Assembly (NCBI RefSeq): GCF_032062105.1
Contig: NW_026933408.1
Coordinates: forward strand, 372,001-436,000
Direction of reading: 5' to 3'
Origin: Saccostrea cucullata
Lineage: Eukaryota
Length of the DNA stretch: 64,000 nucleotides
The notes below the pieces were generated by a model. That model did not search any database, had not been told where the DNA came from, and worked only from the letters and a program-made list of their open reading frames with translations. The translations under genes and the position numbers were made by a program. This document shows positions 3,936 to 43,577 of this stretch, piece after piece; position 1 is the first letter of the stretch, and every line of letters begins with the position of its first letter.

Positions 3936-3974
<39 letters not shown>

Positions 3975-8381: not shown

Positions 8382-11300
8382 TCACGGTATTCTTGCATCC
8401 CCTGTATTAACTATTAAAAAGAAAATAAACAAATAATTAAAATACAGATAATATGTGTCTATCTTTGACAGAGTAAAAAGAAACCACAAGGAAATTTAAC
8501 ATAAAGTACTGGATACATACCACCCATGCAAGTAGAAGTTAATGCGTCAAAGCAAAACTCATTCTCAAAGCACGTTAGCTGAAACAGAAAATAAAAATGA
8601 GAAAGAAATCACTCATAATGAGAGAGAAAGAGAGAGAGATAGAAATAGAGATACCTGTCCACAGTTATCCCCTCTTCCTGCTGTATTTTGTGGAACCTCT
8701 GGTCTTTGATTAAGTCCAACGTTTGACCCTTAACATGTATAAAAACAATCATTAGATACAAAACTAAATCAGTCTACAACAACTATACAGCTATATAAAC
8801 AGGGTACTCACCAGGTCCAAGTGGCGCCCCGACACAGTTATTACCCTGACAAACCTCTGCAATGTCAGGAATACGGATTATATCCGGCCCGGGCCCCCCA
8901 GGTCCTTGTGGAATGGGTTGTTGAGGAATCACCGGCTGTGCGGGTCTGTTCTGTGTAGGAGGGACCCCACCCCCGGGTTGTAAATCACTAAGTGGTGGAA
9001 GACTCATCCCTGTGCCAGATGCTGATGTACCACTCAAAGCGGAAGTTCCAAACAAACCACGTGATGGAGTTTGCGGTACCGCTGCTGGTATATTATCAGT
9101 CATTGGAAACAGCTCTGTGTTTGGAATAGGGTTAAGATCAATAGGCCCAGAGGAACCTGGGATTGGTGAGAGGTCAGAGGAGGAACCAGGCGTTATTATG
9201 ATCGGTGGGTGTCTCGCCCACGGCACCCTGGAACCAGAAGAATCTCTGACGGTCCATCTGGAGTTAGGGTCAATATTTGTATTTGTTCGACTGTTTGGAA
9301 TCAAAGATGAAAAAGGTCCAGTCTGTGAATTCCTATTGATGGGCGATATTGGTCTGTTATTTGGAACAACAGGTATCATTGACGAAGCCTCTGAATTTGG
9401 ACCAAGAGGAGATAATGGACCCGTCTGCGAGAAAGGCATATTTGGTAGCGACTGTACAGGATTAACTGGGCGAACATCGTTCGGATTTACGGCACCTGTG
9501 TAACAAAAGAGACATCATCCAGTTGTATGGAATATATGGAGATAACGAACAGTATTCAAAATCAAAGTCCCTTAAACAATACAAAATTGGAGCAGAGCAA
9601 ACACGGACCTACAAAACATCAGAAGTGGGATCAGGTGCCAAGGAGGAGCGAGCATCCATGCTGATCGGTCACACACGCCGTGTGCTCCTTGTCATGATCG
9701 GGAAATAACGGAAAAACCGTCGAATATTCAGTGTGTATATTATGGTCTAACTATCAGTATGAAAAACACCAGTCGGCATTTGACTAAATGATGAATTGTG
9801 TACTGACAAGGTCATTGTATCGACCATAGATCTTACGAAATGATGACTATAGATGATTTATTATTAATATAATCATCATGAACGAGGGTATATGGTTGTG
9901 AGGTACGTGCTGTAGACGGCAATAGAAAGGTAGCCTGTTAGTGAAATGTCCTTCGAGATTTTTGAACTCGAATTGAGACGCCACCACATGCCGCTTGATG
10001 GCTGCAATTTAATTTAGACCTGTGCCACAGGCTTTTAGTAAGGGAACTTTACCATCGTCCCCTACTGTGACGTGGGACTTCGTTTTGTAAAGATTCATTC
10101 GAAGGACCGGTTTCCACGTCCTATAGTGGGATTCTAACTCGCAGAGTCAGAATCAGCCCGATCCTTATTCCGCGACTCAATCTAGAGCAAATGTTCAAGC
10201 CACTGCATGCGCTACCCGGGCGACATAGTTACGCGTTGCGATTGTTTTCCCTCTGCAAAATTGACGACGATATGTGCAGTACAATTTTGTATGCCTATAC
10301 ATGTTGGTTGTCATTGAAATTTATTTAACGAACCATCCTATGTAAATACTTAAGTTTATTTGGGACTTAAACTTTTTGTAAACTTCAGGCACAAGCATTT
10401 AAAATTACCCTTTAGACTAAAATTATGAATATATGTTGTTAATGATTTCTGGAGTTTTATTTCGAAAAAGCCTTTGAATTAAAAAAAAAATGATAAAAGT
10501 TAGAATTTATGCACTCCAGTTGATTTGATAAGATGCCTTTGGAGTCTCCCAGTTGATTCTTAAGGATACCGACAGTCCCCTTGTAAGTCAACATTTTGCA
10601 AATTCTATGATAAAAACAACGACCATTCTTTACACACTGAATCGTGTAAGGAGTTTTCTTATCGGTCTTTATGACAATGAGCAGACGATTATTGGACCAG
10701 AAGACATGGGGTTCTTACTCCTCCATGGCACTTGATCCTAACTCTGGTGTTTCTATTGGTCCTTGTTTGTTCTCTTCTCAGTTCCAGCATGACATTATAA
10801 CAAATCGAAAGATTTGTTATAAGATATCTTACCAACAGTTAGGGCTATTCCAGTACAATGACCATCTATACATCGGGAGTTTGGCGGACACGGTCTCTGT
10901 TACAGGAATAAAACGGACAGATCAAATACAAAGACCAATGACGAAACATGTGAGTTGATTTATTATTTTGTACATGTGTGTCGATTTTCTTGCTGAAAAC
11001 CTCTAAGTATATGTTGTATTTGAAATTATGAGATATTCAATTATCTAAACTTATTGCATAGATTTTTTTAAACAAATAAAATTTTATTCTAGCTAATTTT
11101 AATCTCCGAAAGATCAAAAATAAAAATTGTTCAGAAATATTCCAACTTTATTATTGTATGGACTTGAATGAAGGAAATATAACAACAGCAAGTTTTTTCC
11201 CTTTTTGTGCGATAGGAAAACTAAGTAAATTCACTTACATCACAGGTTGGATGTGGCCTAGCTACAAGATGAAAAATAAAAATTCAGAGTCAAGTGAAAA

Positions 11301-14300
11301 CCAGGTATAGAACAGATTACTTCTCAGCAATAGCAAATATATGATTTTTTAAAAATCATTTATTTAATTCATACAAAGAGGGGCTTAAGGAACTAAGACT
11401 ATGACCATGAGGGTATTAGAAGACCTACCGTTGAGAACATCGCAGTGACAATCCCCAGGACTGTCACAGTGGCACACGTAGCCGGGGGGACACGAGGGCT
11501 GTCAAAGAAACAAAATTAAAACTTCAGTAATGGCATCTGACCAATTGCCAAGTTAACAAAAAGTCACGTTAAATTAGTCATATTTTTGTCTATTTCAAAT
11601 AAGGAAATTTATTTGCAATCTTCAGTTAGTGCAACTTTAAAGTTAGAATTATATTTCTAAAAAGTATTATGATACATACACTACACTGAGAATTCCCGAC
11701 TGAAAGGAAAGAAATGACATCAAGTCAGTGTTATTGACAATGCTGCAATTCTTACTTATATTTTTGTCATATATAACCTGTAATTCAATATGAAATATTA
11801 ATATCAAATGTAAGCAGTTTAAGTTAAGGGAGTTCTGGTATAACAAGAGAGAAGGAGAAGAGATATCTAAGAACCATGACAAATCTTGAGAAAATTGTTG
11901 AAACCATGGATAAAAAAACAATTATTTAATAGAATATTGATATAACAGAAAATTGTAGACAAACATTTTCAGACCCACCCCCTCCCCCCAATATCACAAG
12001 AGACACTATTGAAAGTACAATATCATAGAGACTTTCAAGAAAGAAAATGCATCTTGCAGAGCTAGCATATTTGTCTTTTTTAGGAAAGGAAGATAACAGT
12101 AACATTTGGTAAAGATTTGAAATATGCTAGCATAAGACCTTTGGATAATGGAATGACCTGACAGCCCTTTGGAATGGAATATTCGTTAGTTATATATAAT
12201 GTAGGCAGTGGAATTCGCGTACGTATCAATTTTACCGAAATTTTCAGTCAGTAAATTTAAAACAATACGTATTACGAATATTTTTAATTTACGAAAAAAT
12301 TCGGTAAAATTGATGGGTACGCGAACTCCTGTGATATAAGGAAACTTTTAGAAACAGCGAAGTTAACAGCTGTGATAGAAGTTAACAGGTAAGACAGCTA
12401 TTTAGCATTTGTGTAATTTTATAAAACAAACCAGTATAATTGAATACAAACCTCTTTGGCATATTCCTTTGTTGCAAACTTCTCCGTTCCTGCATCTAGG
12501 CTTAACAGAAAATGGCTTCGATAATATTAGTAGCTGAGTAAGTTCAAAATACTTAAGTCATACAAGGTTCAAAAGCACACGGTTTACTGTTTATTTTATG
12601 GCACAATGATTTGACCTTGGTCTTGCTAATGTATTGTTTTATTTACGCCTAGTCGGCAATTTTTCAGCCATATTTCGGCGGTCTTGGAAATGGTGATAAC
12701 GAACAGTATTTAAGCTCCGATTTCCAATCAAACAGTACAAATATGAGCAGAGATAACAATGATAGCTCTTAAGATGGGATCAAATGACATGAAAGAGTAA
12801 GCATCCCCTTCGACTGGTCACAGCCGCCATGTGCTCCTTGACATGATCGGGAAAACTGGAGAAAATTGTAAACAATTCAGTGTGTAAATAATGGCTTAAC
12901 AATTAGTATGATAAATGTCAGTCAAAATTTGACTTAATGATAAATTGTAGTTGCTGACAAGGTCATGTATCGACCATAGAAACGATGACTTTAAACGAGA
13001 CTTCTGATATTGTTGTTTCGTTAGATAGCCAGCTTGAGAATGGCCTACCCCGTTTTAGAAAGTTTGTAGGTTGTGCATGGTCTTGTGTATCGAAACAAGA
13101 ATAGGAAGAGACATAGACCCAAAAGCCTCAGGTATATTGCTATATAGATAAGGGAAGTTAACGAATGAAAAGTTGAAGTCATCAAGTTTATTATATGGCG
13201 TTGCTGTTAGGTTATTTCAATCTTTAATTTCAAGCTCATTGGCTAGATCGATTCGACATATGACTTTTTTTCTTCTTATTTTTAAGATTTTGAATAAGTT
13301 CAACTTCAAATGAATACAAAAATACTAGTAGGTCCAATGATAATGATACCTGTAGGAATTCAGAAAGATTGTTAGATTATGATATTGAGTCAAGATTTTG
13401 CAAACCTAGGTAGTAAAATACTCGTTTTACTTTCCTACAATAAAGTGTTGTCAATCTTTTACATTACTCAGACGCTGACAGACAGACAGCTACAAATACG
13501 GCTATAGACAGAACAGCACTTATTGAGGCTTCATGAATTAAAAATTGCTTATTAAAATGTCCCAATTCCATCAGAGTTTTATGAAGTAAAATTGATTTCG
13601 ATAAACACAATTTGAAATAGATTAAATAAGAATGGAAAACCTTCACATATTATAACAAAATAAAGTAATTAAAAAATTATTTTCGTGCACTAGTATTTTT
13701 CCTAATGTGACTTCTGTCTGATCACTACTGATGAATTCTCTTTGAAAAAAATAAGTTTAATACACTATGTAAACCTTTATAATGAACCTACGGCGTATGT
13801 GACCAGTCGAAAGCTTACTACTCCATGGCACCTGATCCCACCTTTGGTGTTTTCAGAGGTTCGTGCACATTATAATTTCAGTGTGGTCCGTCAACAGATT
13901 TTGAATAATTAAAAAAAGATTTTACTGATGTCAGTTTCACTTTTACCATTAACACAGCTTATTTTTTTAAACATCTGAATCAATGCTTACCTCACATGGC
14001 TCTGCAATATAAAATCAATGGACATCATTATAAAATGATAAGACAAAGTTTTTCTTAAAATAACAATCACATACTGGCGGTTCCATGTATTATACGTATA
14101 CTATTATTTTAACAGAAATCTTGTTTCTACATTATCAAGCTTTTGCAAGTTTGTACCTCTCAATGTATAAATCAAAGAACCTTTATGGGGCATGTATTCT
14201 TTCACCCTTAACAACAACGTTTGCACGAAATCTTGACAGAAAACGTTTTAAAAAATATATGTATAGATAATTGGCTGTGAATAACAAATATCAATCGAAC

Positions 14301-17300
14301 ACACCAACATTTAGATTATTGATTTAAAGTTAAAATCATGTCAACATTTTGAACATGAGACAAACATTTGTTTGAAATCACTTACTGTCTTCACATTTTC
14401 CATTTATGCATCGTTGATCATTTCCACAAGCAGGCTAGATTAAAAATAGAATCTTAATTAAAAAATACCCCAATTGACATTAGATATTTTAGGAATGTGA
14501 CATTGTTAAAGATATAAAAGTAACATACCCTGCAGGGCTCTGTAAGGAAAAAGGAAAAAAAGTTTAAATATGAAATATTCAAAGTTATTCAATTTGGTTA
14601 ATTATTAGTCAGAAAGAAAAAAAGGAAAAAAAGTTTAAATATGAAATATTCAATGTAATTGTTATTTATCATAATAGTCATTCGAAAGAAAATATCATCA
14701 TTCAATCTTTGAAATTTCTTAGGAAAAAATGTAAGAATTAGTTAAAAATAAATTTTCAAAAATGAACACATGACAGTGTAGAACTTATCAAAATGACAGT
14801 GTAGAACTTACCAAAATGACAGTGTAGAACTTACCAAAATGACAGTGGCCATGGTGACAAGTCTGACTTTCTTTACAGATTGGCTAAAAATAAAAGATGA
14901 CAGAAACATATCATTAATAAGGATTAACGGATCTACATACCTCAGGTAGGAACAATAGCTCTTAATTGTTATTAAGTTGTAGAAGTCTCAACTTCATATC
15001 AACATCTTATTATGCAAGAATTTTCATTTTGCTGAATATTAAGTGATGGGCCTAATCCAATGTCTGTTGTACGTGTCTTTGGGTCCGTGTAAGTTCGTTA
15101 TCTTTAACTTTTACACGTGTATCACATAAGATGAAAATGCTAATACATATGACACCTGATCCCACCTCCGATGTTTGGAGGTCCGTGTTTGCGCTGCTCC
15201 TATTTTGTATTGTTTTATGGAATTTTGATTTTGAATACTGTTCGTTATCTCCATGTGTTTCATTTCAATTGAAAGTGATTTGTGATACATACTTAGCGAT
15301 GACATACTTGTATGCTTATTCCGAAGCGCATCACATGATAAATGAAGATAATAGATGAAATGGAAAAGCACATCTCCAGCTGCACGGTCATATACCCGCT
15401 CCTTGACATGATCGGAAAATAAACGGGGAAATTCGTCGACAATTCAATGCATAATTAATAATCTAACAATTTATATGATTGACGATATCTATGTTGTTTT
15501 GGGTTGCCAGGTCTTCCATTAATCTATTGGAATTCCCATGGGTACCAATTATGCCCCATTATTAGCAGACCAATTTTTATATTTATATGAAGCAGAATTT
15601 TTGCAAAATCGTATGCATAAAAAGAGGAAAACACTTGCTGTGGCCTTCAACTCGACATTTAGATATATCGACGACGTATTGTCAATTAACAATGGTTATT
15701 TCAATTCTTATGTCAATACGATATATCCTGGTGAGCTTGAGATAAAAGATACCACAAAGTCTGATATATCTGTTTCATATTTGAATATTTTACTTGAAAA
15801 AGACGTTAACAGTTATCAAACAACCAAGCTCTGTGATAAACGTGATGACTTTCAGTTTTCTATCGTCAATTTCCCTTACTTATGCAGCAATATACCATCA
15901 TCACCTGCATACGGAGTTTAGATATCTCAGTGGATTAGATACGCAAGAGCATGCTCTACATATGAAGAATTTCTACATCGAGGTAAATTATTGACAAACA
16001 AGTTGATGAAACAAGAATATCAGCAGGCTCGTTTAAAGCCATTGTTTCGTAAGTTCTATGATCGATACAATGACTTTGTCAGCAAATACAATTTATAATT
16101 GAGTCAAATGCTGACTGACGTTTTTCATACTAATTGTTCGTCCATTATCTATATATATAGTGTATATACACTAAGTTGACGACGGATTTTTCCGTTATTT
16201 CCCGATCATGACAAGTAACAAATGGCGGGTGTGACCTGTCAGCAGGGGATGCTGACTCCTCCATGGCACCTGATCCCACCTCTAATGTTTTGAGGTCCGT
16301 GTTTGCTCTGCTCCTATTTTTGTATTGTTTTATGGACTTTTGGTCTTGAGTGCCGTTCGTTACCTCCATATATTTCATAAAAAACTTCAGTCAGCATTAT
16401 TTTGACTTTATGATAGATTGTGTTTGCTAACAAGGTCATTGTATCGACCAAAAAAGTTACAAAATGATAACTAGAAATGAGACTGCTGATATTCTTGTTT
16501 CATCAACTTGTTCGTCATAAACATTTCTCGTTTTAGAAATTCTTGATAAGTAGAGCATGCTCTTGCGTATTGAATAAACTGGGAGATATAAACCCTTTAT
16601 GCAGGTGGTGAAGATATATTGCTGCATAAGTAGGTGATATTGACAATTGAAAAGTAAAAGTCATCATGTTTTTCATAAAGCTTTTTGGTTAGATTACCAT
16701 TAACGTTTGCTTCTAGTTAAATATCCAAATATGAAACAAACGTATCAGACTCTGTGAGATCTTTTATTTCAAGCTACTTGTATGTATCGTGTTGACATAA
16801 GAATGGAAATAACCATTGATAATTAAGAATATATATATTTAGATGCCGTGTTAAAAAAGCCGTCGATATATTTGTATATCTGAACGTCTCAGAAAGTTTT
16901 TTCTCAATTCTTCTAATAAAGGAGCTTTAACGCAAAGAGTTATGCTTAGGACGAAAAGATCATCTATCAAATGTAGATTTAAGGTATGTTTGTATTTTGA
17001 GAAAAATGATGACATTGGTACCGTGGGATAGACTGTAGAGGCACAATATATTTCAACTGCATTAACGAAATAAGTTACTATATCTAGAAACTGGAACCCT
17101 TTATTTTCTGACAGAGTACTTACCTAGACTTAAAACCACGGATCTGTGTTTTTAATCCCATTTCATATAACTTCAGAAACATGGATGTCTCTTTCTTACA
17201 TAGCAGGTACTTACATTACAAAGGGAGGCCCCCACTACAAAAGTGAAAGAGAGACATTAATGAGAGAGAAAAGATATATAATGCTTTTATATTGAATTGC

Positions 17301-20300
17301 TATTATCTTTTGCAGAATAATTTATTGAATTCCTTACTTCTTTGACATCCACCGCCATAACACACGTATCCCTCGTCACAACCACCCTAAAACATAGAAC
17401 ATCATACATATATAACCACCCTAAAACATAGCACATCATACATATATAACCACCCTAAAACATAGAACACCATTCACTTATAACCACCCTAAAACATAGC
17501 ACATCATTCACTTATAACCACCCTAAAACATAGAACATCATACATATATAACCACCCTAAAACATAGCATATCATTCACTTATAACCACCCTAAAACATA
17601 GAACATCATAGACTTATAACCACCCTAAAACATAGAACATCATACATATATAATCACCCTAAAACATAGAACATCATACACTTATAACCACCCTAAAACA
17701 TAGAACATCATACATATATAACCACCCTAAAGCCTAGCACATCATACACTTATAACCACCCTAAAACATAGAACATCATACACTTATAACCACCCTAAAA
17801 CATAGAACATCATACATATATAACCACCCTTAAACATAGAACATCATTCACTTATAACCACCCTAAAACATAGAACATCATACATATATAACCACCCTTA
17901 AACATAGAACATCATTCACTTATAACCACCCTAAAACATAGAACATCATACACTTATAACCACCCTAAAACATAGAATATATATACACTTATAACCACCC
18001 TAAAACATAGAACATCATACATATATAACCACCCTAAAACATAGAACATCATTCACTTATAACCACCATAAAACATAGCACATCATACACTTATAACCAC
18101 CCTAAAACATAGAACATAATACACTTATAACCACCCTAAAACATAGAACATCATACATGTATAACCACCCTAAAACATAGCACATCATACATATATAACC
18201 ACCCTAAAACATAGAACATCATACACATATAACCACCATAAAACATAGCACATCATACATATATAACCACCCTAAAACATAGAACACCATTCACTTATAA
18301 CCACCCTAAAACATAGCACATCATTCACTTATAACCACCCTAAAACATAGAACATCATACATATATAACCACCCTAAAACATAGCACATCATTCACCTAT
18401 AACCACCCTAAACATAGAACATCATACACTTATAACCACCCTAAAACATAGAACATCATACGCTTATAACCACCCTAAAACATAGAACATCATACATATA
18501 TAACCACCCTAAAACATAGAACATCACTTATAACCACCCTAAAACATAGAACATCATACACTTATAACCACCCTAAAACATAGAACATCATACATATATA
18601 ACCACCCTTAAACATAGAACATCATTCACTTATAACCACCCTAAAACATAGAACATCATACATATATAACCACCCTTAAACATAGAACATTATTCACTTA
18701 TAACCACCCTAAAACATAGAACATCATACACTTATAACCACCCTAAAACATAGAACATCATACACTTATAACCACCCTAAAACACAGAACATCATACATA
18801 TATAACCACCCTAAAACATAGAACATCATTCACTTATAACCACCATAAAACATAGCACATCATACACTTATAACCACCCTAAAACATAGAACATAATACA
18901 CTTATAACCACCCTAAAACATTTATAACATCATACATGTATAACCACCCTAAAACATAGCACATCATACTATATATACCACCCTAAAACATAGAACATCA
19001 TACACATATAACCACCATAAAACATAGCACATCATACATATATAACCACCCTAAAACATAGAACACCATTCACTTATAACCACCCTAAAACATAGCACAT
19101 CATTCACTTATAAACACCCTAAAACATAGAACATCATACATATATAACCACCCTTAAACATAGAACATCATTCACTTATAACCACCCTAAAACATAGAAC
19201 ATCATACATATATAACCACCCTTAAACATAGAACATTATTCACTTATAACCACCCTAAAACATAGAACATCATACACTTATAACCACCCTAAAACATAGA
19301 ACATCATACACTTATAACCACCCTAAAACACAGAACATCATACATATATAACCACCCTAAAACATAGAACATCATTCACTTATAACCACCATAAAACATA
19401 GCACATCATACACTTATAACCACCCTAAAACATAGAACATAATACACTTATAACCACCCTAAAACATAGAACATCATACATGTATAACCACCCTAAAACA
19501 TAGCACATCATACATATATAACCACCCTAAAACATAGAACATCATACACATATAACCACCATAAAACATAGCACATCATACATATATAACCACCCTAAAA
19601 CATAGAACACCATTCACTTATAACCACCCTAAAACATAGCTTATAAACACCCTAAAACATAGAACATCATTCATATATAACCACCCTAAAACATAGCACA
19701 TCATTCACCTATAACCACCCTAAAACATAGAACATCATACACTTATAACCACCCTAAAACATAGAACATCATACACTTATAACCACCCTAAAACATAGAA
19801 CATCATACATATATAACCACCCTAAAACATAGAACATCATTCACTTATAACCACCCTAAAACATAGAACATCATACACTTATAACCACCCTAAAACATAG
19901 AACATCATACATATATAACCACCATAAAACATAGCACATCATACACTTATAACCACCATAAAACATAGGACATCATACATATATAACCACCATAAAACAT
20001 AGCACATAATACATATATAACCACCCTAAAACATAGAACATTGTAGATATATAACTACCCTAAAACATAGAACATCATACATATATACACACACCCTGAA
20101 ACATAGAACATCATACACTTATAACCACCCTAAAACACAGAACATCATACATTTATAACCACCCTAGAACGTAGAACATCATACATATATAATCACCCTA
20201 AAACGTAGCACATAATACATATATAACCACCCTAAAACATAGAACATCGTACATATATAAGTACCCTAAAACATAGAACATCATACATATATATACACAC

Positions 20301-22154
20301 CCTAAAACATAGAACATCATACACTTATCACTTGCTTGGAATATTCTTTGCTCATGCTTCTCTGAGGTATCATTGACATTTGCTTGTGTAATTTTCCTGA
20401 CACATTACATCTTGACTCTTATTAACTGAAGACAAGTCTTTTAACTTGGTGACCTTCAACAAGAAATTGTTCTTTAATATATGTCTGACATTTACTTCTG
20501 AACAATACTGAGGATTAATGCTTCTTATTTTAATCAAGTATAAAATATTCATCACATAGTCTATTCATGTCAAAATAATGACAGTTAAAAGGTTCTTATA
20601 AATGATGATAAGTGTTTGATGTTTTCAAAATAAGTTTCTTATCAGAAAAATATTTCAAGTTTAAAATCTATTATTTGCAATTACAATTTTGTCTATCAAA
20701 TGTAAGGTTTAATTTTTTAATTTAAGTTAAATTTAACCATATGAGCATCCACTCAATCAAGTAATTACACAATGCTTGAATTTCTATCTGTATTCTAAAA
20801 CAAATGAACAATTCCATCATACCGGACACGGCGATGGTGGAGAAGGTGGCCCCCGATTGAAGGGAGAATGGGGTTGTGTCCTCCTTGACATTGATTGGGA
20901 TGGCCCCCGAGGTAGGGGAGAATGGGATTGTGTCCTTGACATTGACGGGGGTGGTCCTGGAACTCTTGGTACTATCCTCACACGAAATGGGTTATGAAAA
21001 ATCCGGGTCATTACATCTTAAAAAAATCAGAAAAATGGTGCTTGTTATAAAGCAAAATCATGTTTACAGCTCAACGCACTTTTTAAGCTCACATGTTTTT
21101 TCGCACAAATTAAGGGCAAATTTTTGCAATAAATATTACTAATGCGAACTTCAGTACGATGACATAGCCCTAAGTTTTATTACATATATAATGTTAGGTA
21201 TAAATGTCCTTTAAAATTGATATCTAAAGTTTCCAAAGTGGATGTTTTAGAGGGGAATTTATCAATAAATGGTATGGTGTTTCTACTATGGGATTCTACC
21301 ATAGTTACAAATTATGTAAAACGAGCTTCCTTTGATACAATGCAGTTGGAAATTTAAAATTTTCTTCTTAAAGGTGAGTATTAAAAAAAAAAATTCTTTG
21401 CTCATTAACCATACTCCTCTTGGTTTTGTCGAAATGTAGCAAAAGGGATAACATTACAGAAAGAAACCATACTAAAGGGTAGGGTAATAAAATATTGTTA
21501 ATTTTTGAATAGTAAATTCTAGGAAAAGGAAAATTAATCTGGATTTACGGTTGGCTGTGGAATGGATCTTTCATGATTCTAGATTTTAGAAGGTGACACT
21601 CTGAAAAAAGCCACGTTATAAACATACAAAGCAGTCAAACAGATGAAAAATACTATTATCACCCTGCGTTAAAGAGTCAGAATGTACAGAAATAAGAAAT
21701 TACAGTAGCTGAACTGTGCCCGTGTCTACCTTTCTGCAAAGAGCTACTGCTTTCAAAAGAACGGATAAAAAGACAGCTGCAATTGGAAAGAAACCACAAA
21801 AAATCAATGGAAATAGTTATTTTTCAGGAAAGAATATATTAAAGTTCCACCAATTGATTTGTGTGAATTATGTTTTAGTAAATGAAATAAATCTCAAATA
21901 ATGTAAACAAATACTTTTGAAATGTATATTGTCTCAGTACACAATTTTACATTATAACGTTGTGACTTTTATTTGTGCGAAAAAAACGTGAGCTTAAAAA
22001 GTGCGTTGAGCTGTATTTATATTGAAAAATCTTGATTTGTTTTGTGAAAGACTCATGAAAATCTATTTGTTTTTTTTTCCAGCTTACCAGCTACCGATCG
22101 TTGAGCAGAGCAAATATGGAACAGGTAAAAAAGTATGCATATTGGTAAGTACAT
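8382..22154 (-). CDS. Gene A: uncharacterised secreted Cys-module / Pro-rich protein, about 506 aa, 17 coding exons including microexons
   Basis: Exons 22088-22154 (signal peptide MYLPICILFYLFHICSA), 20823-21016, 17338-17386, 17215-17234, 14835-14883, 14529-14539, 14386-14434, 13991-14001, 12452-12500, 11680-11699, 11429-11498, 11239-11261, 10833-10896, 8812-9495, 8655-8728, 8521-8578, 8382-8410. All GT-AG with matching phases, 1521 nt open to TGA. Modules read CPGGCDEGYVCYGGGC, CNPICKESQTCHHGHC, CRPACGNDQRCINGKC, CEPRCRNGEVCNKGIC, CSPSCPPGYVCHCDSPGDCHC, CDRPCPPNSRCIDGHC. Minus-strand AATAAA at 8263-8268. Confidence 0.88.
9520..9850 (-). mobile_element. Penelope-like retroelement 3' fragment
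   Basis: Matches the 3' tail (GTGGGATCAGGTGCCAAGGAGGAG...) and end of the RT thumb region seen in the longer copies at 15476-16378 and 37417-38590. Confidence 0.75.
9975..10225 (-). mobile_element. Degenerate tRNA-derived SINE-like element
   Basis: Minus-strand head with A-box-like GGTAGCGC..AGTGG and B-box-like GTTAGAATCC; body loosely similar to 61105-61240. Heavily diverged. Confidence 0.4.
12206..12333. mobile_element. Short foldback MITE-like inverted repeat
   Basis: GGAATTCGCGTACGTATCAATTTTACCGAA at the left pairs with TTCGGTAAAATTGATGGGTACGCGAACTCC at the right. Confidence 0.65.
12685..13260 (-). mobile_element. Penelope-like retroelement fragment (RT C-terminal region and tail), degenerate
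   Basis: Same tail and thumb sequence as the other copies (GATGGGATCAAATG..., GACAAGGTCATGTATCGACCATAGAA, AAAAGTTGAAGTCATC). Confidence 0.7.
14770..14847 (-). repeat. 23-bp tandem repeat (3+ copies) of the gene A exon end plus donor site
   Basis: (ATGACAGTGTAGAACTTACCAAA)x3; on the minus strand each unit is CACTGTCATTTTG|GTAAGTTCTA, copying the end of exon 14835-14883. Confidence 0.85.
15150..16880. mobile_element. Composite of Penelope-like RT fragments in alternating orientation (pseudogenic)
   Basis: Plus-strand RT at 15476-16378: GIPMGTNYAPLLAD..LY..E, FRYIDDVLSINN, KRDDFQFSIVNFPYLCSNIPSSPAYGV then thumb and tail, with stops. Flanked by inverted pieces at about 15375-15475 and 16380-16880 and a solo tail at 15150-15260. 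Confidence 0.88.
17380..20326. repeat. 34-bp minisatellite, about 87 copies, in a gene A intron; each unit contains the exon's 3' splice site
   Basis: Unit TAACCACCCTAAAACATAGAACATCATACA(T/C)(A/T)TA with period 34 (17381, 17415...). The minus strand reads GTTCTATGTTTTAG|GGTGGTT, the same as the acceptor of exon 17338-17386. Confidence 0.95.
21067..22013. mobile_element. Tc1/mariner-type MITE
   Basis: TIRs CAGCTCAACGCACTTTTTAAGCTCAC..TTTTTTCGCACAAAT and ATTTGTGCGAAAAAAACGTGAGCTTAAAAAGTGCGTTGAGCTG, with TA on both flanks; no transposase ORF. Confidence 0.85.
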
Positions 22155-22261
22155 TTGACGTTATTGAGGTTATCTGAAAAATAAAATATATTGGTATAAT
22201 GCCAGTTTAAAACTTTTGAAACTGTTTCTATTGTGATTTAGATTGCATTTTGTATTTTAAT

Positions 22262-23137
22262 TAGGGATGTCAACGAGTACCCGGTTAACCGGGTACTCGA
22301 TCGAACGTCCGAGTATCGAATACTAAAACTGGTACTCGGTTACTCGGATGTATATTTTTTTTCTTTTTCCAAAATACATATATTTATGAAAAACTTATCA
22401 AAAAATAACTTTAATGTGGATACGATAATTAGCGTGTCGTCGTCTACACCTTTAAAACACCCGTTATAGCCTGTGGTTGTGTATATACAGTAATTAGTGG
22501 CCAATTACCTGGTACACAGCTTTTCTCACCTATTGGGATCCTTAATTTTTGGATGGTTTCAATGATTTGTTTTCATTGATGATCGATTGATGTGCTCTTA
22601 TCTTTAAAACATTTTAAAATTATTTAGTAAACGGTACCGAAATCTGGCATGCATAAATATACCGCTACCGACTTTAAAGTATAAAGAAATTGTATGTAAT
22701 ACATGAAATTGAAGATTGAAAAAAAATTAAATCAGCTCTGTGGAATAAATATAACGTATACGGGGCAATAACAATATACGACAACTCATTCCAACAATCT
22801 GCTTCGAGCTTCGCGAGTGTGGTCATTACAAAGGTGCATGGCAGATTGATTAATTTAAAGCGTCTTCCCAAACAAGAACTGTAAACCATTAATTTGTAAT
22901 TCTTGGTGAATCAAATTGATGTCTTTTATGTTAAATAAATAAATTAAGTACAATAAATCATTTTCGGTGGACTCCACGTTTTTAAACATGTACTAAAAAC
23001 ATAATAAAAAACAACATTGGGGTTAAAGAGAGCTTAACTAGGTTTAAGATTAAAATGAACAGCATTATACCCGGGTACTCGATCGGAAAAACGTCCGAGT
23101 AACCGATTATCAAATATTGACCGATTTGACATCCCTA
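22262..23137. mobile_element. Non-autonomous hAT element
   Basis: TIRs TAGGGATGTCAA / TTGACATCCCTA, perfect 8-bp TSD ATTTTAAT (22254-22261 and 23138-23145), subterminal GGGTACTCGATCG repeats at both ends. Confidence 0.9.
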
Positions 23138-23152
23138 ATTTTAATACATTAA

Positions 23153-23889
23153 GGTAGTACACAATAGATAGGACAAATTAAGGTAGTACACAAAAGATAG
23201 GACAAATTTTTCCTCATATTGAATTCTTTGAAACTTTGAAAATATATTCTAATTTACAAAATCTCTCTTATATATGATAGGAAAAAAATTCAACATCACG
23301 TTTTTCAAACATATTTGAATTATGATCTATCATAGAAGAATGTGAATTTTACATTCGACTTGAGAATGAACCTTACTTCAAAATTATCAATTAGTCTATT
23401 GCAAATGTGTCTGATTCTATTTGTAAAGACAACATTCTTGTTACTAAAATTCAGTAAGTTATATTTATACTAGTAAAGAGTAAAAGATGATGTAAAAATA
23501 GTAACATAAAGCGTCGGAATTGAAAATTCAGTAGATGACGGCACAATATTTGAACTTTGTACTCTTGATATGACCTTGACCTTTATAGTATATAAAGAAT
23601 GGAGACTCTTTATATATGTTTCCAAATATTAGCCCTCTACAATTTATGAAACAAAAGTTACACTGCAAATAATAACAGTCAGTTACACGCTTTTTATTGC
23701 TTTTAGACAGCACAGACATTCTAAAATGTAACCTGCGAAGTGACAATTAGTTACTCAGTATTCTCAGATTTCTTCCCAAAATATGAAGAACACGTGCCAC
23801 AACTTATTATTTTTAATAAGAATCATTCATTGTTGCCAATATAGTAATATTTATACATAAGATAAAATTCATGAGTGTTTTGTACTACC
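23153..23889. mobile_element. Probable Kolobok/TTAA-type non-autonomous DNA element
   Basis: TTAA|GGTAGTACA at the left and TGTACTACC|TTTA at the right; the left terminus is duplicated in tandem (~29 bp). Confidence 0.55.
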
Positions 23890-25321
23890 TTTATTTTATA
23901 TTTTTGTTAATATTGGCATACAAAGCACCAATAGCAATAAATAATAAAAATTATACATTTATCAACGTGAGAGTGAATTCAACATTCCCTACGTTGCCAA
24001 GATATACTTGAACATTTATATTTTATAAATATAATTACAAGAATTTTTCAAAATCTTCTTTCTAAAACAATTATTTATAGACAATTCGGAAACAAAATCA
24101 TACCTTGATGCTAATAAAAGATTAATTCCTATTTTAGAGATCTTATATTATTTTGATTCTCAGTTAGTCGTGCTATTATTACACTTTCCTTGACGTCGCG
24201 GACTGTGTAGCATTGGTAATACCTGGATCGACGGGAGTCGGTCATTATTTGTCACAATCCACATCAATCACACGCTTCAGTTCTCTGACAAATGTCGACG
24301 TCATAGTTACGTTTTAATTATCAGCTACAACAATGGTGACCCTTGACCTCCCACATAAACATCCGGAATGAATGCTACAAATGTGACAGAAGAGAAAATA
24401 TTTGTGTACATGAAAATATGCGCTTGAAAACACGTTTTAAAAGTACAGAGCTTTGGAGAGTGAAGATAAAAGCGATTTGCAGAGGTCACAAGCCAGGACT
24501 ACTGTGACGCCATTCGAGGTTTCTGAAGACTTTGACACATTAAAATAAATCAGTGGTTTACCTACGATGAACCATTGATTTAATTACGGAAAAGGAAGTG
24601 TAATGTGTAATTCATCAATAATTACACCTTGAGATTCCCCTGTTAATTTGTACCAGGAAATTTTCTTCCATATTTTAAAAGTTTCAAAAAAGTAACATCA
24701 TTTCATGATGCAAAACATATAATTATCTTCATCAAATACAAGTTAAGGTATTCTCAGACTATGGAAAATATAATTAAAGGATCTTGAATTATCAAGAAAT
24801 CAACTCACCTAACCTGTAAAGAGTATTCACAGAGAAACAAAGAAACAAATTTATAGAAATGGAAAGATTGATGATGTTTTGCGGTAATTAAAACTACAGA
24901 AAAATACAATAGATTTGTTTAAACATTTTAAAGAATGTGCAAGAACAAATAATAAAAATGAATTTATATGATCTATAACTTCTAGTATCAAATTGAATTG
25001 GTGACTGATTGGCATAGTCTTCGACCTTGGGAAACATTTTTGACTTCTGGTCCCACAACTTATTTCTTGTCAATTGTCATTTGCCAATTTTTTGGAGAAA
25101 AATCCTATTGTTCACACAAGTACTAAGACTTGAGTTTCGGATTGACAATATATGTAGTTTTGGATATCAGGTCTTCCATTTATCTGTTTAAATTGCTATG
25201 GGTACTAAATGTGTCCCGTTATTAACAGACCTTTTTTTGTATTCACATGAAGCAGAATTTATTCAAAATCGTATATTCGAGAAGAAAAAGTAAAAACGAA
25301 ACTCTAGTTTAGGACTACAAC

Positions 25322-25913: not shown

Positions 25914-26063
25914 CTGTATACAGGGTTATTTTTGCACTTTCACACAAATATTTGCCCTGTTTTAAATTCGCCCAGTTACAATTCCTTAGAAATCATACTG
26001 TGTTTTCTAAATTCATCCTCCTGTGAGTAGAGCAAATGGAGGCGAAAATTTCCCTGTATACAG
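25914..26063. mobile_element. 150-bp TA-flanked MITE
   Basis: TA|CTGTATACAGGG ... CCCTGTATACAG|TA; removing it restores the host RT sequence TATTTGAATATTGTACTAGAAAAAGACG. Confidence 0.8.
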
Positions 26064-27709
26064 TATTGTACTAGAAAAAGACGTTAATAAATTTTTGTCA
26101 ACAAAGTGTTATGATAAGGGTGACGATTTTAACTTTTCTTACTCCTCCATGGTACCTTATCCTAATTCTGTTGCTTTTAGGGGACATGTTTACTCTGCTT
26201 CCCATTCGTATAGTTTGAGCTTGAATACTCTTCATTATCTCCATATTTCCTTGAACGAATTTCAGACAATTGCTGTTTTTCTGATTTCTCCATTTAAATG
26301 CGACTTGTTGACAAATCTGGATATCACTAACATTACTTGACATCTTCTTGGAATGTTTTGTACTGTAAAATCTTAATAAATGTGTAACGAACAATTTAGT
26401 ATGAACCTTTAAATGCTGATTTATAAACATTCTTAATTTTTTACTTTTTTAATTTAAAACGTTTGTTGTTGAATTTCAATGTGAATGAATACCTATTATG
26501 TTTTCATGATGAAAACTTATTTAATACATCTACTCGCAATGCTAAAATTATATATCAGATCACCTGCATATGTTTTTTTGTGCTAAAAGTATTTAGAATA
26601 CACCTTGATATTTTTGTAAATGAATATATAAATCTTAATGATTTATTAATATAGGTGATAGAGCACACAAATGAACAACATAATGTGCTTCACATACTGC
26701 CAATTTATGACAGTAATTGTCAAAGTGATTCTCATTATAAATACTGCAGAGTTAATCATACAAAAATGAAACAAGATGCTCTTTTGAATAGGACAACTTC
26801 ACATAGTCTATATAAATTATCTGCGAAATGGATGTATTTAAATCTTTTTTAAAAGAATAACGAGATATCAATTTCGATTAGTCTTAAATAATGCAAGCAT
26901 GAATCTCTCAGAAGCTAAATATAATAGGCAGACTCGGTTTTCTTCTTTACATATTATACTCAATTTTGTGTTCATTCTAGTAGGAAAATGCAGATTTTTG
27001 ATCAGGTCATCCTTTTTTTCCTGAGTTGCAAAGAAAACCCAGACTAAAGGTTAACAAGTTTTGTCTTCCTTTGCAGTGCTAGTAATTTAAACTTTATTGA
27101 AGAAGAATTACTAGTAAATATTATTATAATTCTTCATACATGTGTACGTGGAGATGGGATGATACTTACCTTGATTTTTCACCTCGTAACTGGCAAATAA
27201 TTTCTTAATATTCTAACCAGCGTGTTCGATATATTTCAAATGATGTTAATCATTATAAAAGGTCTTAAATCCTGCAAGCATAGTTAGCCTTGTTTTTGAC
27301 TGTAATAATGAAATTGTAAATCTCTCTTCTTTTGTTTGTTGAAGTAAATGTTAAGGTATTATCTCTTAACTTCTCGCCTACGCTGATCAGAACAATGTTG
27401 GATGTCTGTCAAAATTTCAGCCATTCTGATTGTTCTGGTTATTTGAATTCTTGATTATTACTTGCCAATTGTGTTACCTTTATCAAACAAAAATATGAAG
27501 ATGTATTTCTTATTTTTTTTTTCATTTTAAAGAGTAAGGTATGGTTTCAATACAGATCTTGTCCTTTTTTTTTCTAAAAATGAACTTGACGTAAAAAAAA
27601 ATTAAAACGCATGCTTTCTGAGTCTTTGAAATTCCATGAATGAATGTTAAACAAATCATTTTTTTCTCATGACCTTCTCAATGCTAATTGTAATGCCATT
27701 TAATTGTGC

Positions 27710-28787: not shown

Positions 28788-31700
28788 TCAAGGATTAACA
28801 TTTACCCTCTGTCCTGTAACTGGGTCCTGAAACAAGACCGAGCTAAGATCTATTCCTAGCTGACTGTCAGGCACGTTAGACTGTCTAAACTCACTAGCAA
28901 TTCTGGCGTGAATATCTCCAAATCCAGAATTTTGTTGGGTCCCAAATCGTCCAGCTTGAGTTTGCTGTGGAACTCTCGTAAAACCCCCGCCTTGTGGCTG
29001 TTGAGGACCTGCACCAAACGCACCCGGGGTAGATTCTCTGAACCCAGTAAAGAAATCTGTCACCTGTCTCCCGGGGGCGCCTCCTACCTGTCCCCCACTG
29101 TGGTGGTGGTTGTGGGTACCCTGGCCTTCATGGTGGTGGTCATCGTGTCCCGTGTGTGTGTCTGGGATTGGGATTAATTGTCCAGTGGCCCCTGGTCGTG
29201 ATTGATCATGTGTGTGGTCGATGTTAGGGTTTGTAAGGTGTGTCAGAGTATGGGCATCTAACAAAACAAGATTAATAGTTGTAGATGCATAAAGGACTTG
29301 GTTAACTTTATATCCATAACAATTTATTTCCTTGATTAAATTCTGTGTTCTTACCGATTTCACAATGACCATTATGACAAACTTCGGGGGAGACACATGG
29401 GACCTGAAAAATGTACAAGAGTATAATTGATGTGGCCGCAAATAAATTAAGAAATTTATACATCTTTTGTTTTATAGAAATTCAAAAAGATCATTTTTGA
29501 AATGAAACTATAACTCGTTTCAATGTTCTTCGATTAAGAAAGTACTATGCATGTACTAGTATTTGTCTTTAAAAAAGAAGAAAATCAGTTTACTTACAGG
29601 ACAGGTGTTTTGTTTTGTCCCTTCTGAAAATAGAGAAAGCATGATATTTTATGCTAATAAAATTATTTTAAGTTAAGTTTCATGTATTATATGTTATTTT
29701 GTATTTCCCCACTTTGTGCCTCTTTATCTGTAAACCCGTGGGGACCCCCCGGTAACTTTATCCTTTTGAGATAAGAGAACTAGCATCATTATATCTACTG
29801 CTATTGTAAAGACAAGACGGCCAAACATTTGCTGAAATATTTTTTGGATTACTCGAGATTAAAACTTCCTGTGAGAGGTAATATTAATTGACGATTTATT
29901 TCGTATTCTTCTGTGGACATCTTCCTGTGTTGTTGTCGGTGTGGTGAAAACGAAAGTAGATACTCCAATGGCTCCCATTCGCGTAGCGATTATAGGACAT
30001 TCCTTTATTCGGCGGTTGCAGAATTTTATTGCTCATAACACTGAGAATGACAATTTGATACTTTATAGGCATTTATTTGATGTACAGTTTCTTAGTGAAG
30101 GAGGTTTGACTGTCGATCGCATGGTTCACGGACCCAAATTTACGTCATTTGATCCGCCTCCCCAGATCGTTTTTCTACAGATTGGAGGAAATGACCTAGA
30201 TAATACCCATCTAGATGTAGACGCCTTGGTGAGAAAAATCCAGAGTTATGTAAATTACTTGGTTCTGGGATGTGGAGTGCGGCATGTCGTTATCGGCCAA
30301 ATTCTGCGGCGCAACAGGAGGGGTGATTACAACTCCCGGGTCGTCGAGGCTAATTGCTGTCTACAGAACTGGGCCTCCTCTCTAGACAATATCTCGTTTC
30401 ATCATCACCATGGTTTCTGGAAGGACTTATCATTCCTAAGTACAGATGGCGTACACATCAGGTGTTCCCGCACCGACAGCAGCCAGATGAGAAAGTACCT
30501 GCAAAGCGTGAAGAGGGCCGTCTTGCGAGCTTCTCGCACCATTTGGTAATCATGTTCTATTTATACGCATGTGGCAATTAATGTATTGCTTCATGCAAAT
30601 CCATCCCATATAGCAGTAGATAACTATTATATCATTACCGCATTATATCTTACTTGAATTACATGTGGTAATTATTGTATTGCTTCGTGCAAATCCATTC
30701 CATATATAGCAGTAGATAACCATGATGTCATTATATCTTACTTCAATATGCTATATAAACTCAAATTTTCTCTTAGATTTCCATAATTTTAACATTTTTG
30801 GGTCTCGTGCAACAAGTCTTAACTAAATTAATAGGTTTACCAATGGACCAATTATTTGTTACTTACATAGATTAAGATCAATATTAGAATTTCAACTGGG
30901 TAATGTTACCATTTCTTATTCATTTATTAAATACCTGCAGTCTGAATTGATATTTGTTTCTAGGCACAAAGTGTACAGTCTGCTTGGTTAGAGTACCACT
31001 CTTCATAGCATTAGTTCATTGGTAAAACATGCTTTGTTTCTTTAGTTTAGAATTTGTGGTGTCAAAGCTCATAGCTTATTAGTTGGTTTCATTGCTGTTC
31101 CCATTGCATTAGTTGTATGAGATTGGACATCTTTCTATATGTATAAAGGTAGCACTAGATTTTGCTTGGATGACCATTTGTTATTCATACAGTGCTGCCA
31201 TACATTTTAATTATTTATTTATTTATCATGTTTATCACTGGTACCATTTGCACTTGTTTGTATGACCATTTGTCATTCATGGAGTGATGCCACATTTTTT
31301 GTACCAAGTACCATTTGTACTTGGTTTGAATGGCCATTTGTCATTCATTGCTGCTAGCAGGTTTGAACTTGTATAATTTTGACCATTTGTCAAAGTGCAT
31401 TGTACATGTTCTGGTACCATTTGTACCATTGTTTGTTATCATGTGCCATTTGTACATGATGGGATGACCATTTGTCATCTTTTTTCTGCTAGCAGTATTT
31501 CTTTGTGTTGAACTCTGACCACGTGTCAGTTTTCTATTGGCATCACTCACTTGTGCTTGGTATTTTTTGTAAAACATGTATTTCAGTTTGAAATTGAGGG
31601 CTAGAGACACCTACTTTCAATCATATATGACAATATAAGGCTATAGTATGGTCTTCATTTGCAATTAATATAGTCATATAATTTTGTATATACAGAACTT

Positions 31701-34700: not shown

Positions 34701-37700
34701 CACAAAGGGGGGTTCCTGAGCACACAATTAAAAAGTTAGGTAGGTGGGGGTCCGATGCCTTTAGGCATTACATCCGTATTCAATCATTTCCCCTACAGTA
34801 AATTTTCCTACCCTTTGAGTTGCTCAGCAAAGGTCAGTGGCCAGCAAAATTGTTGCACTGCCCATATTTTTGTGCTTTTTGGACATTAACTTGGTGGCCA
34901 GCATTTTGTTGCACCAGTACTGCTATGCGTATTTTCAGTAATTGACTAATGGTCAGCTTTTTTGGTTGCATTAGTCAAGAAATCCATGGTTAACATATCA
35001 TTACTTGAAGCATGTTGCCCCACTGCCCATATTGGGGGGGCGGGGTGCATTAACTTGGTGGCCAGCATTTTGTTGCACCAAAAATTACATAGCGATTCTT
35101 TCCGCATTCGACTAATAGTCAGCAATTGAGTTGTATTAGTCATGTAATGAATAGTTAAAATACGGTTGCATTGAATTTCATTGTGAAGAATGCATTGTTT
35201 TGACTGTGTTGGACAATCATGTGAATACCAAGATGTACACTTAATTTGCAATTTGGAAATTTTTGGGATTCCTTTTTAGTGTTTATTTGCTTAGGATTGT
35301 TGATAACAATTTTACTTTTAATTGCTCCTCTTAAAAATTTCCCCATTGGGCTGCACCTAGGTTACTCATTTGAATCTTATATACATTGCCAGTATCATGC
35401 TATTGACAATATGTTTTATATTGAATCTAAATTAGTTATTTTGAATAAAACAATGATAATGCATTTTCTGACTATATTTCGGGTGGCGCAAGGAAAGGCT
35501 TGTAGCCTTTCCTTTTTTGGCCATATTTTGGAGGCCACCTATTTTGCCAAATTATATATGTTATGTAATAGTCACATACTGGGAGACTAATTGTTATTGC
35601 ATAATTGTGTTTATAATTTTTCTCAGGAATTGTGTTTTAAGGTTACATTGTCTCCCAGTCTTTTTTATTCAGTTTTATGTATTATGTTATATGTTGTCAT
35701 TTCATAATAAATGACATATTTTTGGAACAAACATGTCTTGCGTTATTTGGCAAAAAACAAGCTCAATGTTGTCAGACTGGTGTTTAATTGAAGGAATGAA
35801 AGCTAAACTTAAATGATATTTTATGCTAATAAAATTATTTTAAGTTAAGTTTCATGTATTATATGTTATTTTGTATTTCCCCACTTTGTGCCTCTTTATC
35901 TGTAAACCCGTGGGGACCCCCCGGTAACTTTATCCTTTTGAGATAAGAGAACTAGCATCATTATATCTACTGCTATTGTAAAGACAAGACGGCCAAACAT
36001 TTGCTGAAATATTTTTTGGATTACCCACCTCCATCCCCAAACAGACTTTAATTGTACACTAGGCCACCTCAAGCTCATATGTCTATGTTTTCATTGTAAA
36101 TAATTCTTTTTATATGTCTATTATATTGTTAGTCACATACTATGTAGGCCAAATAATGGAGTTTTGAGCCAATTCATATGTATAAGGCCATATTTTGGAG
36201 GCCACCTATTTTGCCAAATTATATATGTTATGTAATAGTCACATACTGGGAGACTAATTGTTATTGCATAATTGTGTTTATAATTTTTCTCAGGAATTGT
36301 GTTTTAAGGTTACATTGTCTCCCAGTCTTTTTTATTCAGTTTTATGTATTATGTTATATGTTGTCATTTCATAATAAATGACATATTTTTGGAACAAACA
36401 TGTCTTGCGTTATTTGGCAAAAAACAAGCTCAATGTTGTCAGACTGGTGTTTAATTGAAGGAATGAAAGCTAAACTTAAAATTTGTTATTATTTTGATTT
36501 GAAATAACTCAAATCGGTTCACAAGAAACAGAAATAAGATAGGAAAAAAGCAGTTGTTCAAATTTGGTTTGGTATTGTATTCTCCCTATTACGCAAATGT
36601 TCAAGTACAAATTGTGTGATTTTTCTCCCATGGAAATCAACATGTAAAGGTTTATATAATTCCATACAGGGATTGCAAAGTTATGATCCAGACACACAGA
36701 AAGACAGCTAACTAAACCTGCTTGTTTGTCCTTCCATTTATGGAGTTGGGATCAAGAAATATTTATTTCTGATGGGTAAGGAAAGAAACAAATTAAAAAA
36801 CACAAAACAAATAGATACCTAAGTCACAGTGTCCATCGTGGCAGTAATACCCCGGAGGACAGGGCTCCTGTAAAAACAAAATATTGTATATATTATTAGG
36901 GAAATTCGAGTAATTAAAAAGAGAACCTGAATATTTATTGTTTTACATCATGTACGTTTAATATGTAAAAAAAAAAACTCACTACACAAGGTTTTTCCAC
37001 TTTTGGAGTAGGCACTAAAACAAAGAGGATTGATATTAGTTTTATTTCGTTATCTCAAATTCCATTTCCCCGATACATTAAAATTTATTTGTTTTTCGAT
37101 CAATAAGTGTTTTGTAACAAGGTTTTGACAAAGTTGTGAGGTAATCAATTAAGTTGTGAGGTAATCAATTAAAATCAAAGAAAAGTGATATGAAGTTCAA
37201 CTGACATGAATTATTTATTCATAAAAAAGTAACTAACAAAAGTACAAAAAATGTATTCAAAGATAAAATTGTTGTCAAACAGGAAATCGATAAAATTCAA
37301 AATATTTGTTGCATTCGAAGAAAAAACCAGAGATATTCACATGATAAATATATAATGTATAATTAAAGTTTGCAAGAGTCATTAGTCCATATATTATGAA
37401 TAGAAGGCAGAATAGAGATGAAACATATGGAGAAAACGAACCGTGTTCCAGGTCTTAAGTCCATAAAACAATACAAAATAGGAGCAGAGCAAACACGGAC
37501 CTCCAAAACATCAGAGGTGAGATCAGGTGCCATCGAGGAGTGAGCATCCCCTGCGGACCGGTCATACTCGCCATGTGCTCCTTGTCATGATCGAGAATTA
37601 ACGGAAAAATCGGTTTTCAATTCAGTGTAGTGTAAATAATGGACTAACAATTAGTATGAAAAACGTTAATCAGCATTTGACTCAATAATAATTTGCATTT

Positions 37701-43577: not shown

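What the first reader, a model, noticed from the sequence alone, without database searches (positions are those of the whole stretch)
8382..43577. Tandem pair of microexon-built secreted Cys-module genes, largely missed by the ORF track
Seen: two adjacent minus-strand genes splice cleanly into ~506 aa and ~446 aa proteins with a signal peptide, an Arg/Pro-rich N-terminus, a run of C-x3-C-x5-C-x4-C modules and a low-complexity tail. Exon sizes are collinear (A: 49,20,49,11,49,11,49,20,70,23,64; B: 46,23,49,11,52,11,49,32,52,32,49,26,49) although the sequences have diverged strongly, so this is an old duplication that kept its microexon layout. I do not recognise the family. Inference: a lineage-specific secreted family (shell matrix, cement/adhesive, mucus or defence) that automated annotation would fragment. 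This is the best candidate for an undescribed system in the window.
Basis: partly seen in the sequence, partly recalled or inferred. Interest (0 to 1): 0.88.

Follow-up and report, generated by a model that had tools for sequence, protein, structure and literature searches.

The report
Oyster secreted cysteine-module gene pair
Two neighbouring oyster genes make secreted proteins built from a string of tiny disulfide-bonded hairpins, each encoded by a pair of very short exons; both are real, expressed and conserved, both are already listed in RefSeq under uninformative names, and their job (probably building an extracellular material) is untested.

Summary
Observation confirmed. Gene A (506 aa) matches an assembled same-species transcript at all 17 coding exons, both 11-nt exons included. 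The 5' junctions of gene B appear in contigs from four studies. Both genes are already in RefSeq for this assembly (Saccostrea cuccullata; 'uncharacterized' and 'PEAR1-like'), so they were not missed here. Newer RefSeq models of Magallana gigas and Crassostrea virginica do break at the 11-nt exons. A and B are paralogs with collinear modules and unrelated tails, under purifying selection (dN/dS about 0.1-0.25 in the modules). I found homologs only in true oysters. A has an optional module in Crassostrea/Magallana and an invariant RGD; B has a conserved His-rich segment. Modules are predicted beta-hairpins resembling Dumpy DPY and CREMP modules, but membership tests fail. Best guess: extracellular matrix, gel or adhesive components (about 50%). 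No tissue or proteome data were obtained. The scan had noted parts of this on the same DNA only.

The parts
24104..24208 (-).
   Evidence: first 105 nt of transcript contig L061
22088..22173 (-). Gene A exon with ATG at 22154 and signal peptide (67 coding nt)
20823..21016 (-). Gene A Arg/Pro/Ser-rich N-terminal exon (194 nt), ends with Cys1 of module 1
17380..20328 (-). 34-bp minisatellite, about 87 copies, each repeating the acceptor of the next exon; only the last copy is used in the transcript
   Evidence: single acceptor in S. echinata and C. virginica
17338..17386 (-). Gene A module exon 1 (49 nt, phase 0-1)
17215..17234 (-). Gene A linker exon (20 nt, phase 1-0)
14835..14883 (-). Gene A module exon 2 (49 nt); donor duplicated in a 23-bp repeat at 14770-14847
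14529..14539 (-). Gene A 11-nt microexon 1
   Evidence: 11/11 match in transcript
14386..14434 (-). Gene A module exon 3 (49 nt)
13991..14001 (-). Gene A 11-nt microexon 2
   Evidence: 11/11 match in transcript
12452..12500 (-). Gene A module exon 4 (49 nt). RefSeq uses an acceptor at 12551 (+17 aa); the transcript and orthologs use 12500
11680..11699 (-). Gene A linker exon (20 nt)
11429..11498 (-). Gene A module exon 5 (70 nt; two extra Cys in Saccostrea)
11239..11261 (-). Gene A linker exon (23 nt)
10833..10896 (-). Gene A last tandem module exon (64 nt)
8812..9495 (-). Gene A Pro/Ser/Gly/Asn-rich exon (684 nt) with conserved blocks and a Cys pair
8655..8728 (-). Gene A exon (74 nt, phase 1-0) with invariant RGD and first Cys of the terminal module
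8521..8578 (-). Gene A terminal module exon (58 nt, phase 0-1; module spacing C-x4-C-x5-C-x7-C)
8264..8410 (-). Gene A last exon: 29 coding nt to stop at 8382, then 3' UTR to at least 8264
43475..43696 (-). Gene B first exon: 5' UTR from at least 43696, ATG 43577, signal peptide
42952..43238 (-). Gene B cationic, aromatic, Pro/Gln-rich exon (287 nt) with a conserved C-x8-C loop
42724..42772 (-).
42682..42723 (-). 42-nt spacer between the alternative exons; same length and 79% identical in C. virginica
42636..42681 (-).
   Evidence: ortholog transcript P0072 and M. gigas model P0079; conserved in C. virginica
42093..42115 (-). Gene B linker exon (23 nt)
41919..41967 (-). Gene B module exon 2 (49 nt)
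41795..41805 (-). Gene B 11-nt microexon 1
   Evidence: letters between the joints in four runs
41172..41223 (-). Gene B module exon 3 (52 nt)
40905..40915 (-). Gene B 11-nt microexon 2
   Evidence: loose-end letters in four runs
39438..39486 (-). Gene B module exon 4 (49 nt) with a conserved extra Cys (CC)
39000..39198 (-). Gene B linker exon 39198-39167 (32 nt) and module exon 5, 39051-39000 (52 nt)
36819..37014 (-). Gene B linker exon 37014-36983 (32 nt) and module exon 6, 36867-36819 (49 nt)
29355..29623 (-). Gene B linker exon 29623-29598 (26 nt) and module exon 7, 29403-29355 (49 nt)
28788..29257 (-). Gene B last coding exon: His-rich segment (13 His in 55 aa), Gly/Gln-rich stretch, conserved C-terminal block

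Best explanation
A and B are secreted paralogs that most likely act as building or cross-linking components of an oyster extracellular material (soft-tissue matrix, shell or periostracal matrix, mucus or cement). SHOWN: both are transcribed and spliced; each C-x3-C-x5-C-x4-C module is split between a phase 1-0 linker exon (Cys1) and a phase 0-1 exon (Cys2-4), so only whole linker-plus-module pairs can be skipped or swapped in frame; B swaps its first module through two mutually exclusive exons; A skips one whole pair in Crassostrea/Magallana. PREDICTED: each module is a short beta-hairpin and the modules form beads on a string. INFERRED: C1-C3 / C2-C4 disulfides as in DPY and CREMP modules; mutual exclusion because the 42-nt spacer is too short to splice and including both or neither exon gives a premature stop; assembly through B's cationic-aromatic N-terminus, His-metal bonds and the odd cysteines of B modules 1 and 4; cell attachment through A's RGD.
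For: Transcript support. No hydrophobic stretch after the signal peptide. One hairpin per module, pLDDT 82 for two modules and low pTM 0.19 for the whole array. The closest described tandem two-disulfide-module proteins (Dumpy, CREMP, midge silk Sp185) are all fibre or matrix formers (bioRxiv 10.1101/2025.09.16.676614). One copy of each gene, fixed order MIEAP-B-A-SH3RF and dN/dS 0.08-0.25 fit a conserved structural role. His-rich segment, extra Cys and RGD are conserved across genera.
Against: No tissue, stage, shell, mucus or cement data were obtained; function rests on analogy. Known module-based fibres have tens to hundreds of repeats, against 6-8 here. The same cysteine spacing occurs in an intron-less gene on a bacterial-looking metagenome contig, so the module does not imply a function. 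No significant structural match (best Z 3.1; Foldseek E above 2).
Confidence: 0.5

Rival explanations
1. Defence proteins: B's Arg/Pro/aromatic N-terminus acts like the Pro/Arg-rich arm of penaeidin- or arasin-type antimicrobial peptides and the hairpin array binds microbes.
For: B residues 17-128 hold 16 Arg/Lys, 3 acidic and 21 aromatic residues; this region is the least constrained (dN/dS 0.30-0.46); weak sub-threshold likeness to knottin-type peptides. The comparison with penaeidins is from my own knowledge.
Against: No gene expansion, purifying selection throughout, only two alternative forms seen at one module, and proteins far longer than such peptides.
Confidence: 0.2
2. Extracellular zinc or copper binders: His residues on the hairpin turns and B's His-rich segment chelate metal for transport, storage or detoxification rather than for cross-linking.
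For: B has 26-27 His in three orthologs; His-x-x-Gly-His motifs in several modules of both genes; oysters accumulate zinc and copper (own knowledge).
Against: A has few His outside the modules; long conserved Pro-rich and aromatic regions are left unexplained; no metal data.
Confidence: 0.13
3. Soluble or matricellular ligands: A engages integrins through its RGD next to the terminal module (wound or shell repair, haemocyte adhesion), with B as partner.
For: RGD is invariant in five A orthologs, just before a Cys.
Against: The RGD lies inside a block that is conserved as a whole; B has none; one RGD in a Gly/Arg-rich 500-aa protein arises by chance about one time in eight (my estimate from composition).
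Confidence: 0.12

Closest known systems
[quoted passage not shown]
   Same: The B record equals the window model with the 49-nt exon; the A record equals it with one longer acceptor.
   Different: The names are automatic and fail domain tests; no paper found for these accessions or names; newer M. gigas and C. virginica models are split.
Dumpy DPY module (PF21164, PDB 1OIG)
   Same: About 20-residue four-Cys module ending C-x5-C-x4-C around a beta-hairpin, in an extracellular protein.
   Different: First spacing is x3, not x5; no EGF partners, ZP domain or membrane anchor; 6-8 modules against 185; no Pfam hit.
CREMP (avian eggshell membrane) and Chironomus silk Sp185
   Same: Tandem two-disulfide hairpin modules in secreted proteins. 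A's terminal module (x4, x5, x7) is near the CREMP spacing (x4, x5, x8).
   Different: Different spacing in the tandem array, far fewer repeats, long non-module arms.
EB module (PF01683), DUF7107 (PF23416), STIG1 (PF04885), conotoxin TVIIA/GS (PF08094)
   Same: Weak cysteine-pattern matches, E 0.011-0.46; Atlas feature scores 0.76-0.79.
   Different: All below curated cut-offs and within the range that chance gives.
Schistosome micro-exon genes (MEGs)
   Same: Secreted, lineage-restricted, several very short exons, alternative splicing.
   Different: MEG exons are mostly multiples of three and make up most of the coding sequence. Here none of the small exons is symmetric, 7-10% of the coding sequence lies in exons of 36 nt or less, and sequence change is slow.

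Membership tests
Dumpy DPY module | Cys spacing C-x5-C-x5-C-x4-C | tested here: not met
   spacing is C-x3-C-x5-C-x4-C
Dumpy DPY module | Pfam PF21164 hit above cut-off | tested here: not met
   no hit
Dumpy DPY module | beta-hairpin core | tested here: met
   predicted only; two strands per module, pLDDT 82
Dumpy DPY module | C1-C3, C2-C4 disulfides | not testable with these tools
   the model report gives no bond list
Dumpy protein | EGF-DPY-EGF triads, ZP domain, transmembrane segment | tested here: not met
   no Pfam domain; no hydrophobic stretch after the signal peptide
CREMP | C-x4-C-x5-C-x8-C repeats | tested here: not met
PEAR1/MEGF10/Draper receptors | EMI domain and EGF-like repeats of 6-8 Cys (own knowledge) | tested here: not met
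   no Pfam family for P0078; modules have four Cys
PEAR1/MEGF10/Draper receptors | single transmembrane helix and cytoplasmic tail (own knowledge) | tested here: not met
   best 19-residue hydropathy 0.69
Tenascin-X | EGF-like repeats, fibronectin III domains, fibrinogen globe (own knowledge) | tested here: not met
   no such Pfam family in gene A proteins
Schistosome MEG | most of the coding region in very small symmetric exons (PMC4350168) | tested here: not met
   7.5% and 10% in exons of 36 nt or less; no symmetric small exon
Schistosome MEG | secreted product with alternative splice forms | tested here: met
EB / DUF7107 / STIG1 / conotoxin GS | Pfam score above gathering cut-off | tested here: not met
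   11-16 bits against cut-offs of 24-25
Mutually exclusive exon pair | either exon alone in mRNA; both or neither breaks the frame | tested here: met
   P0072 versus P0073/P0075, laid contigs, stops at codons 169 and 131. The 46-nt form was seen in ortholog transcripts, not in this species' contigs
Mutually exclusive exon pair | mechanism (steric limit versus Dscam-type RNA pairing) | not tested
   the 42-nt spacer is shorter than any other coding-region intron in the two genes (76 nt or more); no RNA-structure test run
Shell matrix, cement or mucus proteins | peptides in the material and expression in the secreting tissue | not testable with these tools
   supplement look-ups were blank, and two of the three papers use other identifiers

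The most novel reading that the evidence does not exclude
A and B are unrecognised components of an oyster-specific cement or shell-matrix system, in which His-metal bonds and an unpaired cysteine cross-link strings of hairpin modules, and a conserved two-way splice switch at that very module tunes the material by tissue or stage.
Probability: 0.12. Interest if true: 0.75.

Novelty: new variant of a known kind. Interest (0 to 1): 0.42.

Why it matters
It gives a defined, conserved, oyster-restricted pair of secreted proteins that databases misname after tenascin-X, PEAR1, formin or sporozoite proteins, and that current models in the two most studied oysters split at 11-nt exons, so proteomic and expression studies can miss or mislabel them. 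The module-per-exon-pair layout with a mutually exclusive exon pair conserved between Saccostrea and Crassostrea is a clean small case of splice-tuned modular proteins. If the proteins prove to be in cement or shell, they would be direct handles on oyster adhesion or biomineralisation. Without that evidence they are one more well-built orphan family among several in this genome.

Tried and rejected
Chance splicing: rejected by transcripts. Third paralog on contig C1925: rejected; it aligns with window 614-14000 at 93-98% through introns and the neighbouring SH3RF gene, so it is an allelic haplotig. More family members in the genome: two motif scans and three protein searches found none; the ten hits on C17327 belong to a different six-Cys repeat. 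These scans need exact short motifs, so diverged paralogs are not excluded. The one non-oyster hit (P0082) is an intron-less gene among bacterial-type genes, treated as convergent. RefSeq names tested and rejected. Sequence and fold searches of solved structures gave nothing significant. Ten paper searches and three supplement searches found no study of these genes. The Cys-fixed shuffle control (score 292 against a maximum of 167) also destroys the generic module consensus, so paralogy rests more on module order, linker motifs and exon layout. My own joined models were never sent to a search tool: single exons were searched by reference, and full-length searches used database proteins that the tools returned. 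Exons were joined only inside local scripts to check frames. An earlier count said both genes split after the first 11-nt exon; for C. virginica gene A the break is at the second.

Full report
Observation. Reading the minus strand and scanning for cysteine-module exons recovered two genes. Each C-x3-C-x5-C-x4-C module is split: a phase 1-0 linker exon of 11-32 nt carries Cys1, and a phase 0-1 exon of 46-70 nt carries Cys2-4. No small exon is a multiple of three, so single exons cannot be skipped in frame but pairs can.

Transcript evidence. A 1762-nt contig from run SRR26159588 contains all 17 coding exons of A end to end, including both 11-nt exons, and adds a non-coding first exon at 24208-24104. 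It also uses only the last of about 87 tandem acceptor copies upstream of 17386. For B, contigs of four runs from four studies join exons 1, 2, 49, 23, 49, 11, 52, 11 and enter the next 49-nt exon. One run is on record as RNA and three are guessed; they carry substitutions and a 24-nt deletion, so they come from a close relative or a divergent allele. Contigs give no expression level or tissue.

A second phase 0-1 exon at 42772-42724 lies 42 nt upstream of the 46-nt exon. All four laid contigs and RefSeq isoform X1 use it. Ortholog transcripts carry one form or the other (P0072 versus P0073 and P0075). Including both or neither gives an early stop. In C. virginica the same pair is present with the same 42-nt spacer; the two exons are 92% and 89% identical to the window and the spacer 79%, against 63-80% for B's other exons. 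That is a conserved mutually exclusive pair. A steric cause is inferred from the spacer being shorter than any other coding-region intron here (76 nt or more). Both forms lack Cys3, and module 4 has a conserved extra Cys, so these two could pair within or between chains (inference). In Crassostrea/Magallana, A has isoforms with and without one whole module pair; Saccostrea A lacks that pair.

Relatives. The genome is the S. cuccullata assembly by the database records. Both genes are in RefSeq: XP_062576350.1 for A, and a 'PEAR1-like' 447-aa protein for B that equals the window model with the 49-nt exon. Orthologs occur in S. echinata, M. gigas, M. angulata and C. virginica and in unnamed transcript assemblies. 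Order is conserved: B-A-SH3RF in S. echinata, MIEAP-B-A in C. virginica, and both neighbours in the window. No homolog outside true oysters was found in a full scan with A's tail exon or a word-filtered profile search with the modules; that does not prove absence. Each gene is single in this genome apart from an allelic haplotig of A. A and B align module by module with shared linkers (46% identity over the modules, E 1e-18) while N-termini and tails show no significant alignment. dN/dS is 0.08-0.22 in the modules, 0.13-0.16 in the tails where it can be measured, and 0.25-0.46 in the N-termini; comparisons across genera are near saturation.

Annotation. Current M. gigas models of both genes and the C. 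virginica model of B read through after the first 11-nt exon, and the C. virginica model of A skips the second. The C. virginica DNA shows intact exons of matching size at these points. Older models were whole but misnamed.

Structure. No Pfam family passes its cut-off. A two-module model is confident (pLDDT 82) with one hairpin per module; the seven-module model is low-confidence (pLDDT 55, pTM 0.19), which fits independent beads but does not prove it. Fold searches gave only weak EGF-type and cysteine-rich matches. The best described look-alikes are the Dumpy DPY module (C-x5-C-x5-C-x4-C) and CREMP modules (C-x4-C-x5-C-x8-C, with C1-C3 and C2-C4 bonds), in fibre-forming proteins (bioRxiv 10.1101/2025.09.16.676614; PMC2930355). 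The oyster proteins probably work like these but fail the membership tests. They are not PEAR1, tenascin-X or MEG-type genes.

Function. No expression or proteome evidence was obtained. From anatomy: both proteins have a hydrophobic N-terminus and no membrane segment (SignalP itself was not available); B has a cationic-aromatic N-terminus and a conserved His-rich segment; A has a long Pro-rich arm, an invariant RGD and a terminal four-Cys module with the same two-exon layout. I put an extracellular structural or cross-linking role at 0.5, defence at 0.2, metal chelation at 0.13 and integrin ligand at 0.12.

Verdict. Real, expressed, conserved and unstudied as far as I could search, but already catalogued and built from a recurring module type. 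The exon-pair layout with a conserved mutually exclusive pair is the distinctive part. Novelty: new variant of a known kind. Interest 0.42.

Noticed in passing
G000:C17327:172840-183913 (L017-L026): At least ten exons on one strand, each encoding a different six-Cys, His-rich repeat (C-x5-C-x-C...CHHGHC-x-C), several preceded by dibasic sites; looks like a polyprotein of small His/Cys peptides near ACE-like exons. Unrelated to genes A and B.
   Followed up: partly
window 17380-20328: 34-bp minisatellite of about 87 copies that repeats a 3' splice site; absent in S. echinata and C. virginica; the transcript uses only the last copy.
   Followed up: yes
window 14770-14847: 23-bp repeat (3.4 copies) duplicating the donor of gene A module exon 2; single donor in S. 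echinata; the transcript uses the first.
   Followed up: yes
Not tested.
   Followed up: no
window 1-6737 (+): 3' part of an SH3RF/POSH-like gene, convergent with gene A.
   Followed up: partly
window 63470-63811 (+): Exon of a MIEAP-family gene, divergent from gene B; same arrangement in C. virginica.
   Followed up: partly
window 2580-3794, 46053-46542, 55083-57589: Arrays of a 166-168 bp satellite, typical of oyster helitron-associated repeats (identification from own knowledge).
   Followed up: no
window 37817-38161, 15538-15921, 26023-26340: Several decayed reverse-transcriptase-like fragments of one repeat family in introns and between the genes.
   Followed up: no
window 42989-43051: 24-bp in-frame repeat in gene B exon 2; all four laid runs lack one 24-nt unit.
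   Followed up: partly
G000:C1925:1-16351: Uncollapsed haplotig of window 614-14000, annotated by RefSeq as a separate partial gene LOC134238075.
   Followed up: yes
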